Source of the DNA: Macrostomum lignano
Lineage: Eukaryota
Direction: 5' to 3'
NCBI GenBank assembly: GCA_002269645.1
Contig: NIVC01001485.1
Location: 124,001-188,000, forward strand
Length of the DNA stretch: 64,000 bases
Shown: piece by piece, positions 2,249 through 60,681 of the stretch
Position numbering within the stretch: the first letter of the stretch is position 1
Layout of the letters: each line of letters starts with the position of its first letter
Translations under genes and position numbers: made by a program
Notes under the pieces: generated by a model
The model's database searches: none
What the model saw: the letters and a program-made list of their open reading frames with translations, nothing else
Told to the model about the DNA's origin: nothing

Positions 2249-28721
<26,473 letters not shown>

Positions 28722-52000: not shown

Positions 52001-55000
52001 CAGTGGTAGACGCATCATCAAACTCTGGCGCCATTGATTGACATTGACATTGGGTTTGTGCAGGAAACCATAGGCGCAGGAGCGGGGGGTGGATAGTGGG
52101 GCCATGCCCCCCCCCCACATTAAAAAGTCGGGGGGGGGGGGGGCGTAATGTTATCTGGCCCCTCCACATTTTAAATGCAAAATGTAGACTTCTTATTTTT
52201 TACTCTTATTTCTGATTTTTGCTGCTTTGCATTAATGCATTTTGCTGCAGGGCGACAAAACATAGCGCCAAATTGAGTGCCTGCGGCGCCAAAATGAGTG
52301 CCTGCGGTGCCAAATTGAGTGCCTGCGGCGCCAAAATGAGTGCCTGCGGCGCCAAAATGAGAGCCTGCGGCGCCAAAATGAGTGCCTGCGGCGCCAAATT
52401 GAGTGCCTGCGGCGCCAAATTGAGTGCCTGCGGCGCTAAAATGAGTGCCTGCGGCGCTAAAATGAGTGCCTGCGGCGCCAAAATGAGTGCCTGCGGCGCT
52501 AAAATGAGTGCCTGCGGCGCCAAATTGAGTGCCTGCGGCGCCAAAATGAGTGCCTGCGGCGCTAAAATGAGTGCCCGTGGCGCCAAAATGAGTGCTTGCG
52601 GCGCCAAATTGAGTGCCTGCGGCGCTAAAATGAGTGCCTGCGGCGCTAAAATGAGTGTCTGCGGCGCTAAAATGAGTGCCTGCGGCGCTAAAATGAGTGC
52701 CTGCGGCGCCAAAATGAGTGCCTGCGGCGCCAAAATGAGTGCCTTCGGCGCCAAAATGAGAGCCTGCGGCGCCAAAATGAGTGCCTGCAGTGCCAAAATG
52801 AGTGCTGACAACACCGATTCTAAAAATAATCGGTACATGATAATGTGCAGTTCCCATATAAAAAATAACAAAAATCTACCTCGACGGGGGGCGTGCGTCC
52901 TGTGCGCCCTCCCCCCACTCAAATCCGCCACTGAACCTGCCCCCCCCACTCTTTGAAACGTTCCTAGAAACTAAGGTCGGGCCTGTGCAATTCATGCTTA
53001 TGAGGACCAATCCTGCCGTGGTATAGTGTACAATGCTGTACATGTCTGAAAGAAAATTGTTATAAGAAAAATGATTCTATTTATTCAATTCAATTTGGGG
53101 CTGAATTGGAATCTCGGCTTGGCTCTGCTCGTGCAATTAACGGCCTTGAGAGCCAACCCCCAAGGCGCAGTGAAGTGTACATGCCTAACGATAAAATAAA
53201 AGTTAGGGCCGCTGTACACTCCTGTGTGAGTGTGTGCCTGCGTACGTATCCGCGCGCTTGTGTGCCTGCTCAGGGGAGTCTGCGGAATGGGCAGTAATGC
53301 CTCTCGCCGGTTGTGTGCCTATGTCGCTTAAAGTGCGCCAGGGTGCACACAACCCCCTGCCTCTAAAAAAATTGCCCGTCCCATCCCCAATCCGCAGCGT
53401 TTTCCAAGCGCAATTCGCCTTGGCCAATGAAAACAAAATCCGACTGAGCGCATGGGGCACTGACACTGGCAGTCTGAGAGTGTGCGCACTCGACCTGCTC
53501 AGCCTAGATCTACTCGCCACCTGCAGTCTGGAATACGATACCAGCATACTTAATTGTAGATTCCTCTGGCCAGCGCATGCCAGCTCGACAGTCGGTGCCT
53601 CTGATCGGGACTATCGCGATCCGCAACTTGGCTTACTTGTTTCAGCAATTACCGAACCAGTAGTACTTTTCACCGGCTTGTTTGCTTCTAGTAGCAGCAG
53701 CAATAGTAGCGGTAACAGTTCAATTCCGCAGCGCCAGGTGGCTCTGCCAGGCACCAGAGATTTGGACTGTCCAGCGTTTCTATGCGTACTGGATGTTGAC
53801 GAAGATGGCGAAGATGAAATTGTTGTTGGCAGCTTCTGTCAGCGGATTCAGATTTATAAACGACAGTCGGAGACTGGTGGGTAGCCTTGGTTTGTTGGTT
53901 TTTTCTTGAAAATCGCCCTTCAAGCTACAACTCGCTTTGAGAATCAGCCTCCAAGCTACAACTCACTTTGAGAATCAGCCTCCAAGCTACAACTCACTTT
54001 GAGAATCAGCCTCTAAGCTACAACTCACTTTGAGAATCAGCCTCCAAGCTACAACTCACTTTGAGAATCAGCCTCCAAGCTACAACTCACTTTGAGAGTC
54101 AGCCTCCAAGCTGCAACTCACTCTGAGAATCAGCCTCCAAGCTACAACTCACTTTGAGAATCAGCCTCTAAGCTACAACTCACTTTGAGAATCGCCCTCC
54201 AAGCTACAACTCACTTTGAGAATCAGCCTCCAAGCTACAACTCACTTTGGGAATCAGCCTCCAAGCTACAACTCACCTTGAGAATCAGCCTCCAAGCTAC
54301 AACTCACCTTAAGAATTACCCTCCAAGCTACAACTCACTTTGAGAATCAGCCTCCAAGCTACAACTCACTTTGAGAGTCAGCCTCCAAGCTACAACTCAC
54401 TTTGAGAATCAGCCTCCAAGTTACAACTCACTTTGAGAATCAGCCTCTAAGCTACAACTCACTTTGAGAATCGCCCTCCAAGCTACAACTCACTTTGAGA
54501 ATCAGCCTCCAAGCTACAACTCACTTTGGGAATCAGCCTCCAAGCTACAACTCACCTTGAGAATCAGCCTCCAAGCTACAACTCACCTTGAGAATTACTT
54601 TTCAAGCTACAACTCATCTTGAGAATCGCCCTACAAGCTACAACTCACCTTGAGAATTACCCTCCAAGCTACAACTCATCTTGAGAATTACCCTTCAAGC
54701 TACAACTCACCTTGAGAATTACCCTCCAAGCTACAACTCATCTTGAGAATTACCCTTCAAGCTACAACTCATCTTGAGAATTACCCTTCAAGCTCCAGCT
54801 CATATTGAGAATCTAATCTTGCTTGCGAGACTTGCGCAAAAGGCTTGATTAGCTGAAAAAGCCTCAATGTTACCTAATCTCAGCCCTCAATTTATCACCT
54901 GTCTTAACTTGTCATGCATCAGGTGAGTACAGCCTCACCTTTGAACGGCTATTCAACACGCCAGTCCAGTGCGTGGCCCACGCCGACGTAACTGGCGACG

Positions 55001-55841: not shown

Positions 55842-56589
55842 ATGTACTATTGACAGTCTAACATTATTCTATGTTCCACAACAAGTAGTGTTGTTCACCG
55901 CTTCATTATCGCCTATCGAATTACGATAAATACTGAATTTGTTTACTTGTTCGCAGTTACCTCTAGCTCGCAAAATGCTCATAATTCGTTTAATTATTTG
56001 AAAAAAAATGCGTCTTTCAAAGTAATAATGACATCAACTTTTTCAAAGTGCTGTTTTTCATCTACGCTCGTAAAATGTATGTAATGCGTATCTAGTTGTA
56101 ATTGCTACAATGATACGAAAGCATGCATCTTGATTCCTTTATTATTATTAATATTATTGTTATATTTCATACTTTCAAACCTGATCGCTAATAACGTACT
56201 GAGTAAATGTATTTATTCCAGGCGTTGTTTGTGTACGTATCAATAAGGATACGTAATTGATTTTTTAGCATGCAGAAAAAATATATACCAAGCTTTGTAG
56301 TTCTTTCTTAGATATCTTAGTTTTCTATTATACAGACAGTTATAATTGACAATTGTCTGAAAGATGCTATTGTTTAAAAACGTTTCAACTTACTTTTAAA
56401 AAATATCTCTACATCAAATTATTAGAGTGAAGACAACCATAATTTTTATGTACTATAAAACAATTTCAGAACTGTAAATAGTGAAGCCACTTTGAAGGAA
56501 ATTATCAAGTTTTGATACGCTGGAATGCATTGACGTTTTTATGGTTTATGGTTATTAGCTATAAATTTTAGGTAAATCAAGATCAGACG

Positions 56590-57312
56590 GGCAAGCGTAT
56601 AGGCTGGTAGATAGACAGGTAGACAGACATGTAGGTAGATCGACAGACAGGAAGATAGGCGTGTAGGTAAATAGACAGACAGATAGACAGGTAGTTAGGT
56701 AGATAGACAGGTATGTAGGTAGGTAGGTAGATAAACAGATAGTCAGGTAGGTATAGGTAGGTAGATAGACGATAGGTAGGTAGGTAGATAAGTAGATAGG
56801 TAGATGAACAGATGGACTGGTAGGTAGGTAGGTAGGTAGGAAGGTAGATAAACAGATGGACAGGTAGGTAGGTAGGTAAATAGGTAGGTAGATAAAAAGA
56901 TAGACAGGTAGGTAGGTAGGTAGGTAGATGAACAGATGGACAGGTAGGTAAGTAGGTAGGTAGATTAAAAAGATAGTCAAGTAGGTAGGTAGGTAGGTAG
57001 GTAGGTAGGTAGGTAGATAGAAGATAGGTAGGTAGGTAGATGAACAGATAGTCAGGTAGGTAGGTAGGTAGGTAGGTAGGTAGATAGACAATAAGTAGGT
57101 AGGTAGGTAAGTAGGTAGGTAGATGAACAGATGGACTGGTAGGTAGGTAGGTAGGAAGGTAGATAAACAGATGGACAGGTAGGTAGGTAGGTAGGTAGGT
57201 AGGTAGGTAGGTAGGTAGATAAAAAGATAGACAGGTAGGTAGGTAGGTAGACAGACTGGTCGATAGACACACAAACAGACACGAAATCACCTGGCACAAA
57301 GACAGACAGACA
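56590..57312. repeat. (GTAG)n/(ACAG)n degenerate microsatellite
   Basis: Directly visible; ends ~35 bp before the SDHAF2-like start codon. Confidence 0.95.
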
Positions 57313-57345
57313 GGCTTGACTAAAACAATCCTATTGGTTCACCTC

Positions 57346-58533
57346 ATGCTACCTATCAGTCGTCATTTAATTCGCGGCTCGGCTTCGCTGCCACAGCTGC
57401 TGCCGCTACGCCTGCGACCGAATTTCCGCTTCAGTCGACAATCAACGTACTGGTCGAGGTATTTCGATCCACCGCTGGGCGACGCCACCACGGAGCCGCC
57501 GCAGCCGGTGCACCCGGAACCGGAGGGCCTGGAGAACCTGCCGGACAAGAAAGCCCGACTGTTGTTCGCAAGTCGCCAGCGTCGTCTGCCAGACTGCGCC
57601 GGCCTGTTGCACGCGTTCGCCGACGCCAGGCTAGAGAGCATGTCGGCTGGACAGACTGACGAATTCGATCGGCTGCTGCGGCTGCAGCTGCCCGACGAGG
57701 AGCTGCTGGCCTATGCGCACGGCTCGCTGACTCCGCCGCCACCGCAGCTGAACTGTTTGAGCGCATTTCACGAGCTGGTTGAGTTCGCTAGGTTAGTCGT
57801 CTACATAGGAGTTGTAGCCTAGTGGTTGTGTGTGGCGACCCACCAGTCCTTGGACTGAACAGCCGTACGCAGCCTTCAGATGCGCCGCGCAATTATAGCT
57901 GCAGCTGAGCTGTCGGTTGCACACCTGACCATTAGGGCAGGTGTAATGAATTATTATTATTATATGTAGCTTTAAGATATTTAAACTCTAATAATCTCCA
58001 GTCCAATGGGGGAATTAGCATTCAAAGCCTGTGGCACATCCTTCTTCAGTTGCTTTGTACATTGGTGGCGTGATTCAGATGGTGTTCAAACTTATTTAAA
58101 GAGGGCGTTGCACCCTTATAATAGCAGCATTAACTGCGGCTAGAAACAATGAATACAATGAGTCGCAAAATCGCTTTTTAGATCGCCGCCGCTGCCTCTG
58201 CGCAAGCGACAGCAGCAGCAGAATTCCGCTGTCGAGTCCGTTGAACAGCAGCGTCAGCGCCTGCTCTATCAGAGCCGGAAACGCGGCATGCTAGAGAACG
58301 GTCTGCTGCTGAGCTGCTTCGCCGATCGGCATCTACCTGGCATGTCGCCCGCACAGCTGGACATGTACGACGCAATCATTAACGAACCGTCGAACGATTG
58401 GGACATTTTCTATTGGCTAACCGGGGCTAAACCGTTGCCTAGTCGCTATGACAACGAGGTAGCCAAGGCTATGATCGAGTTTGTTCGCAATGAAGATCGC
58501 GAATCGCGTGTTCGTCAGCCGGATTTGCGATGA
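57346..58533 (+). CDS. SDHAF2: SDHAF2/Sdh5-family succinate dehydrogenase assembly factor with two tandem Sdh5 domains, ~265 aa. Exons 57346-57791, 58182-58533
   Basis: Exon 2 has the canonical [18 protein letters not shown]...[12 protein letters not shown]...RQPDL. Exon 1 has an Arg/Leu/Ser-rich presequence-like N-terminus and a degenerate Sdh5 copy. Phase-2 intron GCTAG|GTTAGT...TTTTTAG|ATCG joins them in frame. Confidence 0.85.
57808..57965 (+). mobile_element. Internally deleted SINE copy with (ATT)n tail, in the SDHAF2 intron
   Basis: A-box-like gttgtagcctagtgg joined directly to the shared 3' body (tgtggcgaccc...gctgtcggttgc); tail attattattattat. Confidence 0.6.
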
Positions 58534-58919
58534 TTTATTAGCAAGCTATAATTTGACCATCTATATTTGTATTATCATCTCTGTTGCAAAGAAATGCTTT
58601 TCGTGTCGTAAATACACCGTCTTTACTACTATCTGTAGCTGCAGTAGTGATCACTATTATAGATCAGCTTACTTAAGGCTTAGTTAAAACTTCTTTGACT
58701 TTTCTGCTCAAGTTTCTATTTGCGTGTCTTCACGATTCCCACCCGTAAGGGCCAGCCCCAAAAGGTACAGACAGTTTGCATGTCTGACGATTGGGCAGAA
58801 TTTCCTGTCGCCGAAGGCGTCACCCACCCTCCCGCAAATGCATATGAGCTAATATCATATGCATGTATATCCGAGATCATTGCGACTGCTAGCAAGGCTG
58901 TCTGTAAATGCTGTCGTTA

Positions 58920-59750
58920 ATGCTACAATTACTGACCATGTCTGTCACGGCCGTTAACCAACATTTCATGCTCAGGCTAGGCCACGCACTGCTGTCAGCA
59001 GCTTTAGCTACTAGTAGAGCGGCAATGAGCAGCTGGACTCACCTAGGCCAGGCATCGGCTGTTCGAATTGACGAGCAGCTGTTCGCGGAGTACGGTTTCA
59101 GCGTTGAGCAGCTGATGGAGCTGGCCGGATTAGCCTGCGCCCAGGCTGTGCACCGGGCCTACCCGCCGGCCTCTGAACTGGACGGCAGCACCAGCTGGCC
59201 GCGGGTGCTGATCTGCTGCGGCCCCGGGAACAACGGCGGCGACGGCCTCGTGTGCGCCCGCCACCTCGGCCAGTTCGGCTACTCGCCGTCAGTTTATTAT
59301 CCCAAGCGGACGGACAAGCCGTTGTACCGCAATCTGCTCAAGCAGTGCATTGGCTCCGGTATTCCTATAGTTGAATCGCATCCCACCGCTGCCACAATGG
59401 CCGCTGATTACGATATCGTTGTTGACGCTCTGTTTGGCTTCTCATTTAAGCCGCCAGTCAGACCGGAATTTGAGGCGGTGATGTCGGCACTGTCTGGTGC
59501 CAGTGTTCCCGTTGTCAGTATTGATGTGCCCAGCGGTTGGGATGTGGAACTTGGTCCCGTGCTGGAGACTCAGTCTATCCAGCCCGACTGTCTCGTATCG
59601 TTGACGGCGCCTAAAATGTGCGCCAAACATTTCACTGGTAGGCATCACTTTTTAGGCGGCCGGTTTGTGCCGCCAGAACTGGCCAGATCGTTTAGCCTGA
59701 ATCTGCCGCGCTATCCAGGCTGCGAGCAGATCGTGTCTCTGAATAATTGA
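58920..59750 (+). CDS. NAXE: NAD(P)HX epimerase (YjeF N-terminal domain, APOA1BP), intronless; start codon uncertain (58920, 58938, 58968 or 59025)
   Basis: IDEQLFAEYGFSVEQLMELAGLACAQA, CGPGNNGGDGLVCARHL, IVDALFGFSFKPPVR, SIDVPSGWDVE, LVSLTAPK, HFLGGRFVP. Confidence 0.95.
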   Translation: MLQLLTMSVTAVNQHFMLRLGHALLSAALATSRAAMSSWTHLGQASAVRIDEQLFAEYGFSVEQLMELAGLACAQAVHRAYPPASELDGSTSWPRVLICCGPGNNGGDGLVCARHLGQFGYSPSVYYPKRTDKPLYRNLLKQCIGSGIPIVESHPTAATMAADYDIVVDALFGFSFKPPVRPEFEAVMSALSGASVPVVSIDVPSGWDVELGPVLETQSIQPDCLVSLTAPKMCAKHFTGRHHFLGGRFVPPELARSFSLNLPRYPGCEQIVSLNN

Positions 59751-60042: not shown

Positions 60043-60681
60043 GGGTCGTTTCACAAACCCTAATTTTCACAACGTCGAAACCAGAACCTTTCATAAGACC
60101 TATATTTCATAAACCCTAATTTTCACAACGTCGAAAATAAGCAATGCAGCAGATTTCACAAGACCTAAATTTCACAAGCCCTAAATTTCATAACACCTAA
60201 AAGGCATGCACAGAATTTCAAAAGCCCTAAATTTCACTATCTCTAAATTTCACAAACCCTAAATATCACAACGTCGAAAATTTAATTTGCTTCTATTTTC
60301 AGAAGCTCTAAATTTCACAAGCTCTAAATTTCACAACGCCTAAAAACACTATGGAGATACAATCTTTCACAAGACCTAAATTTCACAACGCCTAAAAACA
60401 CTATGGAGATACAATCTTTCACAAGACCTAAATTTCACAACGCCTAAAAACACTATGGAGATACAATCTTTCACAAGACCTAAATTTCACAACGCCTAAA
60501 AACACTATGGAGATACAATCTTTCACAAGACCTAAATTTCACAACGTCTAAAAGCACGTCTGAAAGATTGTATCTCCATAGTGTTTTTAGGCGTTGTGAA
60601 ATTTAGGGTTTATGAAATTTAGAGCTTATGAAAGTTTGTGTCTTGCGACGTTGTGAAATTTAGGGCTTGTGAAAGCGACCC
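60043..60681. mobile_element. MITE / foldback element with ~37-bp TIRs, near-perfect 9-bp flanking duplication (Mutator-like) and internal 52-bp tandem repeats
   Basis: Left gggtcgtttcacaaaccctaattttcacaacgtcg vs right reverse complement gggtcgctttcacaagccctaaatttcacaacgtcg. Flanks gcttattca / gcttattct. Confidence 0.85.

What the first reader, a model, noticed from the sequence alone, without database searches (positions are those of the whole stretch)
57346..58533. Double-domain SDHAF2: a degenerate Sdh5 copy with the G78R-equivalent change fused to a canonical copy
SDHAF2/Sdh5/SdhE proteins are normally single-domain. Here exon 1 encodes a presequence plus [57 protein letters not shown], colinear with exon 2 [57 protein letters not shown]. 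In copy 1 the RGxxE flavinylation motif is RRxxD; the Gly-to-Arg (CGT at 57583-57585) is at the position of the human paraganglioma loss-of-function mutation G78R, and the conserved Trp residues are lost. The frame is intact and the intron joins the two in phase, and exon 2 has no in-frame start before its motif, so the fusion looks functional. A catalytically dead module could be a regulator, a second SDHA-binding arm, or an adaptor for a rhodoquinone/fumarate-reductase-type complex II (speculative).
Basis: partly seen in the sequence, partly recalled or inferred. Interest (0 to 1): 0.75.

Follow-up and report, generated by a model that had tools for sequence, protein, structure and literature searches.

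The report
Flatworm SDHAF2 with degenerate extra domain
The flatworm Macrostomum lignano makes its succinate-dehydrogenase assembly factor (SDHAF2) with a second, degenerate copy of its own domain in front of the normal one; no other protein found in the searches has this layout, and what the extra domain does is untested.

Summary
Window 57346-58533 (+) is a two-exon gene of the flatworm Macrostomum lignano. Exon 1 is 57346-57791 and exon 2 is 58182-58533, joined in phase 2 by a GT-AG intron, giving 265 aa. Two public protein entries carry the same joined product: UniRef A0A1I8FZS1 and NCBI PAA66961.1, the latter from RNA-seq-based gene models.

Both halves pass Pfam Sdh5 (PF03937, cut-off 27 bits): domain 1 scores 36.2 bits and domain 2 scores 84.9.
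- **Domain 2** is canonical. It has RGMLE, and its G184 corresponds to human G78.
- **Domain 1** has RRLPD, with R80 at the G78 position. It has lost both Trp residues and has no C-terminal RxxQPDL tail. It keeps only 16 of 43 near-invariant animal SDHAF2 positions.
- **Domain 1 still looks folded.** It models as the five-helix Sdh5 fold (TM 0.83 to yeast Sdh5).
- **Exon 1 looks constrained.** Against a ~97% identical second genomic copy it shows 8 synonymous and 2 non-synonymous changes (omega 0.08) and no indels.

No other tandem Sdh5 protein and no separate single-domain M. lignano SDHAF2 turned up.

Most likely this is a lineage-specific internal duplication: domain 2 does the flavinylation job and domain 1 is a retained accessory pseudo-domain of untested role. 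An in-phase alternative donor at 57459 could also give a normal 154-aa isoform. This is a new variant of a known kind, of moderate interest.

The parts
57346..57791 (+). Exon 1 (CDS aa 1-148 plus 2 nt of codon 149): presequence, spacer and degenerate Sdh5 domain 1
   Evidence: First ATG of the ORF that opens at 57316. Donor is TAG|GTTAGT at 57791|57792. Same structure in L001. Omega 0.084.
57346..57465 (+). Probable mitochondrial presequence (aa 1-40: 8 Arg, 1 His, no Asp or Glu)
   Evidence: Composition read directly from the translation. Disordered in the AF2 model. No targeting predictor was run, so this is an inference.
57459..57460 (+). Candidate alternative 5' splice site (GAG|GTATTT), same phase as the annotated donor; would give a 154-aa single-domain isoform
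   Evidence: Enumeration of phase-2 GT sites. Conserved in L001. No transcript evidence; hypothesis only.
57538..57786 (+). Domain 1: degenerate Sdh5 five-helix domain (aa 65-147; Pfam match aa 70-135 = 57553-57750)
   Evidence: Pfam 36.2 bits against a cut-off of 27. AF2 pLDDT 84 with five helices. Foldseek TM 0.83 to 2LM4 and 0.79 to 6VAX_B. Keeps 16 of 43 near-invariant positions.
57580..57594 (+). RRLPD (aa 79-83), in place of the RGxxE motif; R80 (57583-57585, CGT) sits at the human G78 position
   Evidence: Alignments. Human numbering taken from 6vax_B.
57792..58181 (+). Intron (390 nt, GT...AG, 44% GC against 56-63% in the exons)
   Evidence: Against L001 it has 3.4% substitutions and 141 gap columns, while exon 1 has none.
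58182..58533 (+). Exon 2 (aa 149-265 plus stop at 58531-58533): linker, canonical Sdh5 domain 2 and C-terminal tail
   Evidence: Matches human SDHAF2 (8dyd_B, 6vax_B) at E 1e-34.
58255..58482 (+). Domain 2: canonical Sdh5 domain (Pfam aa 174-249)
   Evidence: Pfam 84.9 bits. Keeps 42 of 43 near-invariant positions. AF2 pLDDT mostly above 90.
58282..58296 (+). RGMLE motif (aa 183-187); G184 (58285-58287) corresponds to human G78
   Evidence: Role of this Gly is described in PMC5773532.
58492..58530 (+). Eukaryotic SDHAF2 C-terminal tail ([14 protein letters not shown]), present only after domain 2
   Evidence: Alignments. The N- and C-termini of SDHAF2 bind SDHA (PMC10784507).

Best explanation
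**What it is.** This is the SDHAF2 gene of Macrostomum lignano. As far as the searches show, it is the organism's only kind of SDHAF2 gene, present in at least two ~97% identical genomic copies. It encodes a 265-aa mitochondrial precursor laid out as: presequence, spacer, degenerate Sdh5 domain, about 24-aa Pro/Gln-rich linker, canonical Sdh5 domain, C-terminal tail.

**Shown.**
- The two-exon, in-phase gene model.
- Both domains belong to the Sdh5 family.
- Domain 2 is fully canonical.
- Domain 1 keeps the helical core but has lost the RGxxE Gly and Glu, the DWDIxYW Trp residues and the tail.
- Exon 1 is under purifying selection.

**Inferred.**
- Domain 1 arose by duplication of an animal-type SDHAF2 domain within this lineage and then diverged fast.
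- After import, domain 2 does the usual job. It docks on SDHA so that the Gly carbonyl of RGxxE contacts the FAD-ligand His, which promotes covalent flavinylation.
- Domain 1 cannot do this job itself. It is kept as a folded accessory module that replaces the usual short N-terminal lead-in. Its most likely role is an extra or altered contact surface that affects how the factor binds SDHA or is released from it.
For: **Gene model and organism.**
- Gene model.
- Organism and existing joined proteins: UniRef A0A1I8FZS1 at 100% identity and PAA66961.1.
- Mlig_3_7 genes derive from RNA-seq and a transcriptome assembly (PMC5730564).
- The second copy, L001, has the same exon and intron structure.

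**Family membership and fold.**
- Both Pfam hits are above the cut-off.
- Domain 1 aligns with domain 2 at E 3e-10.
- Domain 1 model: pLDDT 84, TM 0.83, 0.79 and about 0.7 to yeast Sdh5, human SDHAF2 and E. coli SdhE.
- Domain 1 is still predicted as five helices when it has no alignment depth.

**Divergence of domain 1.**
- Near-invariant positions kept: 16 of 43 for domain 1 against 42 of 43 for domain 2.
- Domain 1 has the animal-type loop length, not the shorter fungal or bacterial one.

**Selection on exon 1.**
- 8 synonymous and 2 non-synonymous changes, omega 0.084, p 0.0006.
- Non-synonymous rate 0.6% against 4.4% in non-coding flanks, p 0.0004. No indels, against 141 gap columns in the intron.

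**Exon 2 cannot stand alone.**
- It has no ATG ahead of the motif.
- The M. lignano spliced leader ends in ATG (PMC8629364). Read by hand from the sequence, that ATG would be out of frame at this acceptor.

**Uniqueness.** With a tandem domain-2 query only the M. lignano protein scores 291 bits. All 1255 other hits score 140 bits or less.
Against: - I saw no RNA-seq reads myself. The transcript support is second-hand, through the annotation.
- The selection test rests on 16 substitutions between two very close copies. For domain 1 alone it is 4 synonymous and 2 non-synonymous, p 0.04.
- No ortholog from another Macrostomum species or other flatworm was available. So the age of the duplication and long-term constraint are unknown.
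- The domain 1 model was built on an alignment of canonical family members, which biases it toward the family fold.
- The accessory-binding role is inference without any direct evidence.
- The phase-matched alternative donor at 57459 could make domain 1 optional.
Confidence: 0.65

Rival explanations
1. **Alternative splicing makes domain 1 optional.** The donor GAG|GTATTT at 57458|57459 would be joined to the same acceptor. That gives a 154-aa canonical single-domain SDHAF2 (presequence aa 1-37, Arg, exon 2) which does the housekeeping job. The 265-aa form would be a minor or condition-specific isoform.
For: - The site is in exactly the same phase as the annotated donor.
- It lies right after the presequence.
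- It is conserved in L001.
- The product has the normal animal SDHAF2 length of 145-165 aa.
Against: - The match to the donor consensus is weak (6 of 9, against 7 of 9 for the annotated site).
- By my rough estimate, an AG|GT in the right phase somewhere in 446 nt is close to an even chance.
- Both public protein entries carry the long form.
- Codons 38-149 show 6 synonymous and 2 non-synonymous changes and no indels, so the stretch is translated.
- This rival is compatible with the main explanation.
Confidence: 0.15
2. **Domain 1 is a functionless relic.** It would be a decaying duplicate tolerated as a spacer between the presequence and the working domain. It stays open only because a stop or frameshift there would destroy the essential domain 2.
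For: - 27 of 43 near-invariant positions are lost, including the whole functional motif and the tail.
- No relative of domain 1 was found outside M. lignano.
- The selection signal for domain 1 alone is weak: 4 synonymous and 2 non-synonymous changes, p 0.04.
Against: - Merely keeping the frame open does not explain the deficit of missense changes. The non-synonymous rate is 0.6-1.0% against 4.4% in non-coding DNA.
- The hydrophobic core and several conserved Arg residues are retained, and a five-helix fold is still predicted.
Confidence: 0.17
3. **Gene-model artefact.** There would be two adjacent genes, a divergent paralogue in exon 1 and a canonical SDHAF2 in exon 2, wrongly merged. Or exon 2 would get its 5' end by spliced-leader trans-splicing or from an unseen first exon.
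For: - M. lignano has many polycistronic units and much trans-splicing.
- The NCBI locus tag ends in g2, which I read as the second gene cut from a transcriptional unit.
Against: - Exon 2 has no in-frame ATG before Met185, which lies inside the motif, and so has no presequence.
- Read by hand, the spliced leader's terminal ATG joined at 58182 is in the wrong frame and meets TGA after about 21 codons (SL sequence, window sequence).
- The donor and acceptor are canonical and in phase.
- The same structure is kept in two genomic copies and in two separate database entries.
- The intron is AT-rich and full of indels.
Confidence: 0.03

Closest known systems
Animal SDHAF2 (human SDHAF2; PDB 6VAX, 8DYD)
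   Same: Domain 2 plus its tail matches human SDHAF2 at E 1e-34 over 103 aa. It has [13 protein letters not shown] and RQPDL, and keeps 42 of 43 near-invariant positions. There is an N-terminal presequence. Domain 1 has the animal-type loop length.
   Different: Human and all other hits are single-domain proteins of 113-210 aa. Here a second, degenerate Sdh5 domain sits between the presequence and the canonical domain. It replaces the short N-terminal lead-in that contacts SDHA in the human complex.
Yeast Sdh5 (PDB 2LM4) and bacterial SdhE/YgfY/CptB (PDB 1X6I, 6C12)
   Same: The same five-helix fold is predicted for domain 1: TM 0.83 to 2LM4 and about 0.7 to SdhE. Like bacterial SdhE, domain 1 has no eukaryotic C-terminal tail.
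   Different: All of these keep RGxxE. Domain 1 has RRLPD instead. The motif's Gly carbonyl contacts the FAD-ligand His, and mutating it reduces flavinylation in bacteria and yeast and is linked to paraganglioma in humans (PMC5773532).
Human SDHAF2 G78R (paraganglioma loss-of-function allele; Hao et al. 2009, cited in PMC5773532)
   Same: Domain 1 carries Arg at the homologous position (R80), by alignment through domain 2 and 6vax_B.
   Different: In the flatworm the change sits in a duplicated domain next to an intact copy. It comes with about 26 other losses at conserved positions. So it marks a diverged pseudo-domain and is not a single disabling mutation.
Separate SDHAF2-A / SDHAF2-B paralogues in some arthropods and molluscs
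   Same: These are also lineage-specific duplications of SDHAF2. The names appear for Octopus, Trichogramma, Lutzomyia and Haemaphysalis.
   Different: Those are separate single-domain genes of 148-160 aa. Here the duplicate is fused in one polypeptide and is degenerate.

Membership tests
Sdh5/SDHAF2/SdhE (Pfam PF03937), domain 2 (aa 173-265) | Profile HMM score above the gathering cut-off | tested here: met
   84.9 bits against 27. E 1e-34 to human SDHAF2 chains.
Sdh5/SDHAF2/SdhE (Pfam PF03937), domain 2 (aa 173-265) | RGxxE motif with the conserved Gly (human G78, E. coli G16) | tested here: met
   RGMLE at aa 183-187. G184 aligns with residue 78 of 6vax_B.
Sdh5/SDHAF2/SdhE (Pfam PF03937), domain 2 (aa 173-265) | Eukaryotic features: N-terminal mitochondrial presequence and conserved C-terminal RxxQPDL tail | tested here: met
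   The tail RVRQPDLR is present. The presequence lies on exon 1, is Arg-rich and has no acidic residue in aa 1-40. No targeting predictor was run.
Sdh5/SDHAF2/SdhE (Pfam PF03937), domain 2 (aa 173-265) | Promotes covalent FAD attachment to SDHA | not testable with these tools
   Needs complementation of a yeast sdh5 deletion or an in-vitro flavinylation assay.
Sdh5/SDHAF2/SdhE (Pfam PF03937), domain 1 (aa 65-147) | Profile HMM score above the gathering cut-off | tested here: met
   36.2 bits against 27, E 5.9e-9, profile positions 1-63 of 76. 13 library hits at E 1e-3 or better: the M. lignano protein itself plus 12 single-domain proteins that all carry a canonical RGxxE motif.
Sdh5/SDHAF2/SdhE (Pfam PF03937), domain 1 (aa 65-147) | Five-helix bundle fold | tested here: met
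   AF2 pLDDT 84.4 with five helices. Foldseek TM 0.83 to 2LM4, 0.79 to 6VAX_B and about 0.7 to 1X6I/6C12. This is a prediction guided by a canonical alignment. The five helices recur at pLDDT 52-74 without alignment depth.
Sdh5/SDHAF2/SdhE (Pfam PF03937), domain 1 (aa 65-147) | RGxxE motif | tested here: not met
   RRLPD: Gly to Arg at position 80, Glu to Asp at position 83, plus a Pro at 82.
Sdh5/SDHAF2/SdhE (Pfam PF03937), domain 1 (aa 65-147) | Conserved DWD(I)(Y/F)YW segment and C-terminal tail of eukaryotic SDHAF2 | tested here: not met
   PDEELLAY: W to E at 118 and W to Y at 123. No RxxQPDL, because the domain ends at EFAR and runs into the linker.
Sdh5/SDHAF2/SdhE (Pfam PF03937), domain 1 (aa 65-147) | Binds SDHA/FrdA flavoprotein and promotes flavinylation | not testable with these tools
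   No complex prediction or assay was available. Loss of the motif predicts no flavinylation activity. Whether it binds is unknown.

The most novel reading that the evidence does not exclude
Domain 1 is a working pseudo-chaperone module, and tandem Sdh5 is a real new architecture for a complex II assembly factor. For example, domain 1 could hold a second flavoprotein surface or a second partner, such as an SDHAF4-like step, SDHB hand-over, or a fumarate-reductase-mode complex II in a hypoxia-tolerant sediment worm. It could also gate domain 2 within the same molecule. A further variant is that the linker is cut after import, so one precursor releases two separate Sdh5-fold proteins. None of this is excluded, and none of it is supported beyond the purifying selection and the retained fold.
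Probability: 0.2. Interest if true: 0.6.

Novelty: new variant of a known kind. Interest (0 to 1): 0.4.

Why it matters
SDHAF2/Sdh5/SdhE is treated as a strictly single-domain factor from bacteria to humans. Its RGxxE glycine is the textbook disease residue, G78R. Here nature supplies a construct in which an intact domain is permanently tethered to a copy that carries the G78R-type change and has lost the other signature residues, yet is still held under selection.

If domain 1 binds SDHA or another partner, binding could be studied apart from flavinylation activity. It could also show how the N-terminal extensions of eukaryotic SDHAF2 control hand-over during complex II assembly.

If domain 1 is only a spacer, the case is a tidy example of how a duplicated domain decays inside an essential gene. 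In either case the public entries record one Sdh5 family hit (or 'hypothetical protein') and do not flag the second domain.

Tried and rejected
1. **Relatives of domain 1 elsewhere.**
   - A word-indexed search with exon 1 found only the M. lignano cluster.
   - A full HMMER scan of 1.84 billion representatives gave 13 hits at E 1e-3 or better. Apart from the M. lignano protein itself they are single-domain RGxxE proteins.
   - A JGI metagenome scan found nothing.
   - So no ortholog was available for a deeper dN/dS test.

2. **Other tandem Sdh5 proteins.** An artificial domain-2-domain-2 query ranked only the M. lignano protein at the two-domain score level.

3. **Direct transcript evidence.**
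   - P0001 has no contig on record.

4. **Horizontal origin of domain 1.** Its best outside hits are fungal or bacterial at 38-42% identity. I rejected a foreign origin because domain 1 has the animal-type loop length. The resemblance fits a long branch with GC-rich composition.

5. **Spliced-leader ATG as the start for exon 2.** Rejected because it is out of frame (hand-read).

6. **tRNA or SINE in the intron.** ARAGORN and Rfam found nothing.

7. **Literature.** No paper discusses a flatworm SDHAF2.

Full report
**What is in the sequence.** Window 57346-58533 (+) holds two open stretches separated by 390 nt of AT-richer DNA.
- Exon 1 runs from the first ATG of its ORF (57346) to a canonical donor, TAG|GTTAGT, at 57791|57792.
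- Exon 2 begins after TTTTTAG| at 58182 and ends with TGA at 58531-58533.
- The lengths are 446 + 352 = 798 nt. The split codon AG+A gives Arg149, and the product is 265 aa.
- Exon GC is 63% and 56%, against 44% for the intron.
- Exon 2's reading frame opens only at 58162. Its first in-frame ATG, 58288, is the Met inside RGMLE, so exon 2 cannot make a targeted, motif-bearing protein on its own.

**Where it comes from, and whether the join is real.**
- The joined protein is 100% identical to UniRef A0A1I8FZS1, 'Succinate dehydrogenase assembly factor 2, mitochondrial', from Macrostomum lignano.
- Its 90% cluster also holds NCBI PAA66961.1 (BOX15_Mlig033141g2), a 266-aa near-identical copy.
- That second copy lies on NIVC01001519.1 (locus L001). 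It has the same exon 1, intron and exon 2 structure, the same splice sites and the same neighbours: a 461-aa gene upstream and a YjeF_N gene downstream.
- The Mlig_3_7 gene set was built from RNA-seq (StringTie/TACO) and a mapped de novo transcriptome. Transcriptional units were cut into genes at trans-splice and poly(A) signals (PMC5730564). The join is therefore transcript-derived, although I could not inspect the reads.
- M. lignano trans-splices many mRNAs to a 35-nt leader that ends in ATG (PMC8629364). Read by hand against the window sequence, that ATG joined to the exon 2 acceptor falls in the wrong frame and meets a stop after about 21 codons. Trans-splicing therefore does not rescue a stand-alone exon 2.

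**Two Sdh5 domains.**
- Pfam PF03937 (cut-off 27 bits) matches exon 1 at 36.2 bits (E 5.9e-9, aa 70-135) and exon 2 at 84.9 bits.
- The halves align with each other at 29% identity, E 3e-10.
- *Domain 2* matches human SDHAF2 (6VAX_B, 8DYD_B) at E 1e-34. G184 falls on residue 78 of the full-length human chain.
- *Domain 1*, in an alignment with 44 animal SDHAF2 proteins, keeps 16 of 43 near-invariant positions: R71, L72, L73, S76, R77, R79, L88, F91, A92, L96, D108, L110, D117, P132 and two lead-in residues.
- Domain 1 has changed Y74F, Q75A, K78Q, G80R, M81L, L82P, E83D, N84C, G85A, W118E, W123Y and others, and it has no RxxQPDL tail.
- Domain 2 keeps 42 of 43.
- In the E. coli FrdA-SdhE complex the motif's Gly carbonyl hydrogen-bonds the histidine that carries FAD. 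Mutating that Gly reduces flavinylation in bacteria and yeast and is linked to paraganglioma in humans (PMC5773532).

**Fold.**
- With an alignment of canonical relatives, AlphaFold2 gives domain 1 a five-helix bundle (pLDDT 84.4).
- Its best PDB matches are yeast Sdh5 2LM4 (TM 0.83), human SDHAF2 (0.79-0.80) and E. coli SdhE/YgfY (about 0.7). Everything else is noise.
- That alignment biases the result toward the family fold.
- In a full-length run the relatives aligned only to domain 2. Domain 1 was still predicted as the same five helices, at lower confidence (pLDDT 52-74). Residues 1-56 were disordered and domain 2 was mostly above 90.

**Selection.** The window and L001 copies differ by 16 coding substitutions.

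| Region | Synonymous | Non-synonymous | Omega | p under neutrality |
|---|---|---|---|---|
| Exon 1 | 8 | 2 | 0.084 | 0.0006 |
| Exon 2 | 5 | 1 | 0.058 | 0.003 |
| Domain 1 alone (codons 61-149) | 4 | 2 | 0.17 | 0.04 |

- Substitution rates are 2.2% and 1.7% in the exons, 3.4% in the intron and 5-6% in the flanks.
- Exon 1 has no indel, while the intron has 141 gap columns.
- The non-synonymous rate of exon 1 is 0.6% against 4.4% for non-coding DNA, Fisher p 0.0004.
- This argues that exon 1, domain 1 included, is translated and constrained. The sample is small and covers only recent divergence.

**Uniqueness and origin.**
- A search with exon 1 alone found only the M. lignano cluster among 5.8 billion proteins.
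- A full HMMER scan of 1.84 billion representatives gave 12 further weak hits (E 1e-6 to 1e-3). All are single-domain RGxxE proteins from fungi, bacteria or animals.
- With an artificial domain-2-linker-domain-2 query, the M. lignano protein scored 291 bits. The other 1255 hits scored 140 bits or less, and the 119 of them listed are 113-210 aa long.
- Within the reach of these searches, then, no other tandem Sdh5 protein exists, and no separate canonical M. lignano SDHAF2 shows up.
- Domain 1 is no closer to domain 2 (28-29%) than to other family members (up to 40-42%), which suggests a long branch.
- Domain 1 has the animal-type loop length ([10 protein letters not shown] = [10 protein letters not shown]). 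Fungal and bacterial proteins are two residues shorter there. This points to duplication of the animal gene and not to foreign origin.

- GAG|GTATTT at 57458|57459 is a donor-like site in exactly the same phase as the annotated donor, and it is conserved in L001.
- Spliced to 58182 it yields a 154-aa protein: presequence aa 1-37, Arg, then all of exon 2. That is the ordinary animal SDHAF2 size.
- It may be the ancestral exon 1 donor, a live alternative site or chance. No transcript data were available to decide.

**Most likely mechanism.**
- *Shown:* a two-domain, in-phase, transcript-annotated gene with a canonical C-terminal domain and a degenerate but folded and constrained N-terminal domain.
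- *Inferred, domain 2:* after import and presequence removal, domain 2 and its tail bind SDHA and promote covalent FAD attachment as in other eukaryotes.
- *Inferred, domain 1:* it lacks the Gly/Glu motif, the Trp pair and the tail, so it does not flavinylate.
- Domain 1 sits where canonical SDHAF2 has a short N-terminal segment that becomes ordered on SDHA. The N- and C-termini of SDHAF2 are critical for SDHA maturation (PMC10784507).
- It therefore plausibly alters or adds to SDHA contact or release.
- The rivals are an optional isoform, a functionless relic and a model artefact. They are weighed in their own sections.

**Verdict.** The functional ideas remain speculation. The protein is already in public databases, filed as SDHAF2 in UniRef and as a hypothetical protein at NCBI, but its tandem, half-degenerate architecture appears undescribed and unique in the searches run. 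I rate it a new variant of a known kind, with interest about 0.4.

Noticed in passing
window 56555-57250 (and L001 upstream of 9998): About 700 bp of imperfect (AGGT)n microsatellite with interspersed GATAGACA-type units lies immediately upstream of the SDHAF2 start. It is conserved in the second copy. It creates long spurious minus-strand ORFs (56555-57274 and 56583-57299). It may be repeat-filled intergenic spacer inside a polycistronic unit.
   Followed up: partly
window 58908-59750 (+); L001 11800-12579: A YjeF_N (PF03853) gene, which looks like NAD(P)HX epimerase / NAXE, starts only about 375 nt downstream of the SDHAF2 stop on the same strand. The NCBI SDHAF2 locus tag ends in g2, which I read as the second gene of a transcriptional unit. 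The two genes may therefore share an operon-like unit.
   Followed up: no
L001 about 10470-10595 (intron), absent from window after 57829: The paralogous copy has a 123-nt insertion in the intron with a tRNA-like box B (GGTTCGATTCC), possibly part of a SINE. Alternatively the window copy has a deletion. ARAGORN and Rfam find no tRNA.
   Followed up: partly
window 54000-54813: Tandem array of a 31-nt unit (TGAGAATCAGCCTCCAAGCTACAACTCACTT), at least 26 copies at 92% match. It starts at or before the edge of the scanned stretch.
   Followed up: no
window 60089-60500: Nested tandem repeats of 16, 52 and 62 nt (TTTCACAAGACCTAAA-type units) downstream of the YjeF_N gene. They run to the edge of the scanned stretch.
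   Followed up: no
window 58207-58218 vs L001: The poly-Gln stretch of the interdomain linker differs by an in-frame 6-nt indel between the two copies (QQQQ against QQQQQK). This is the only coding indel in the gene.
   Followed up: yes
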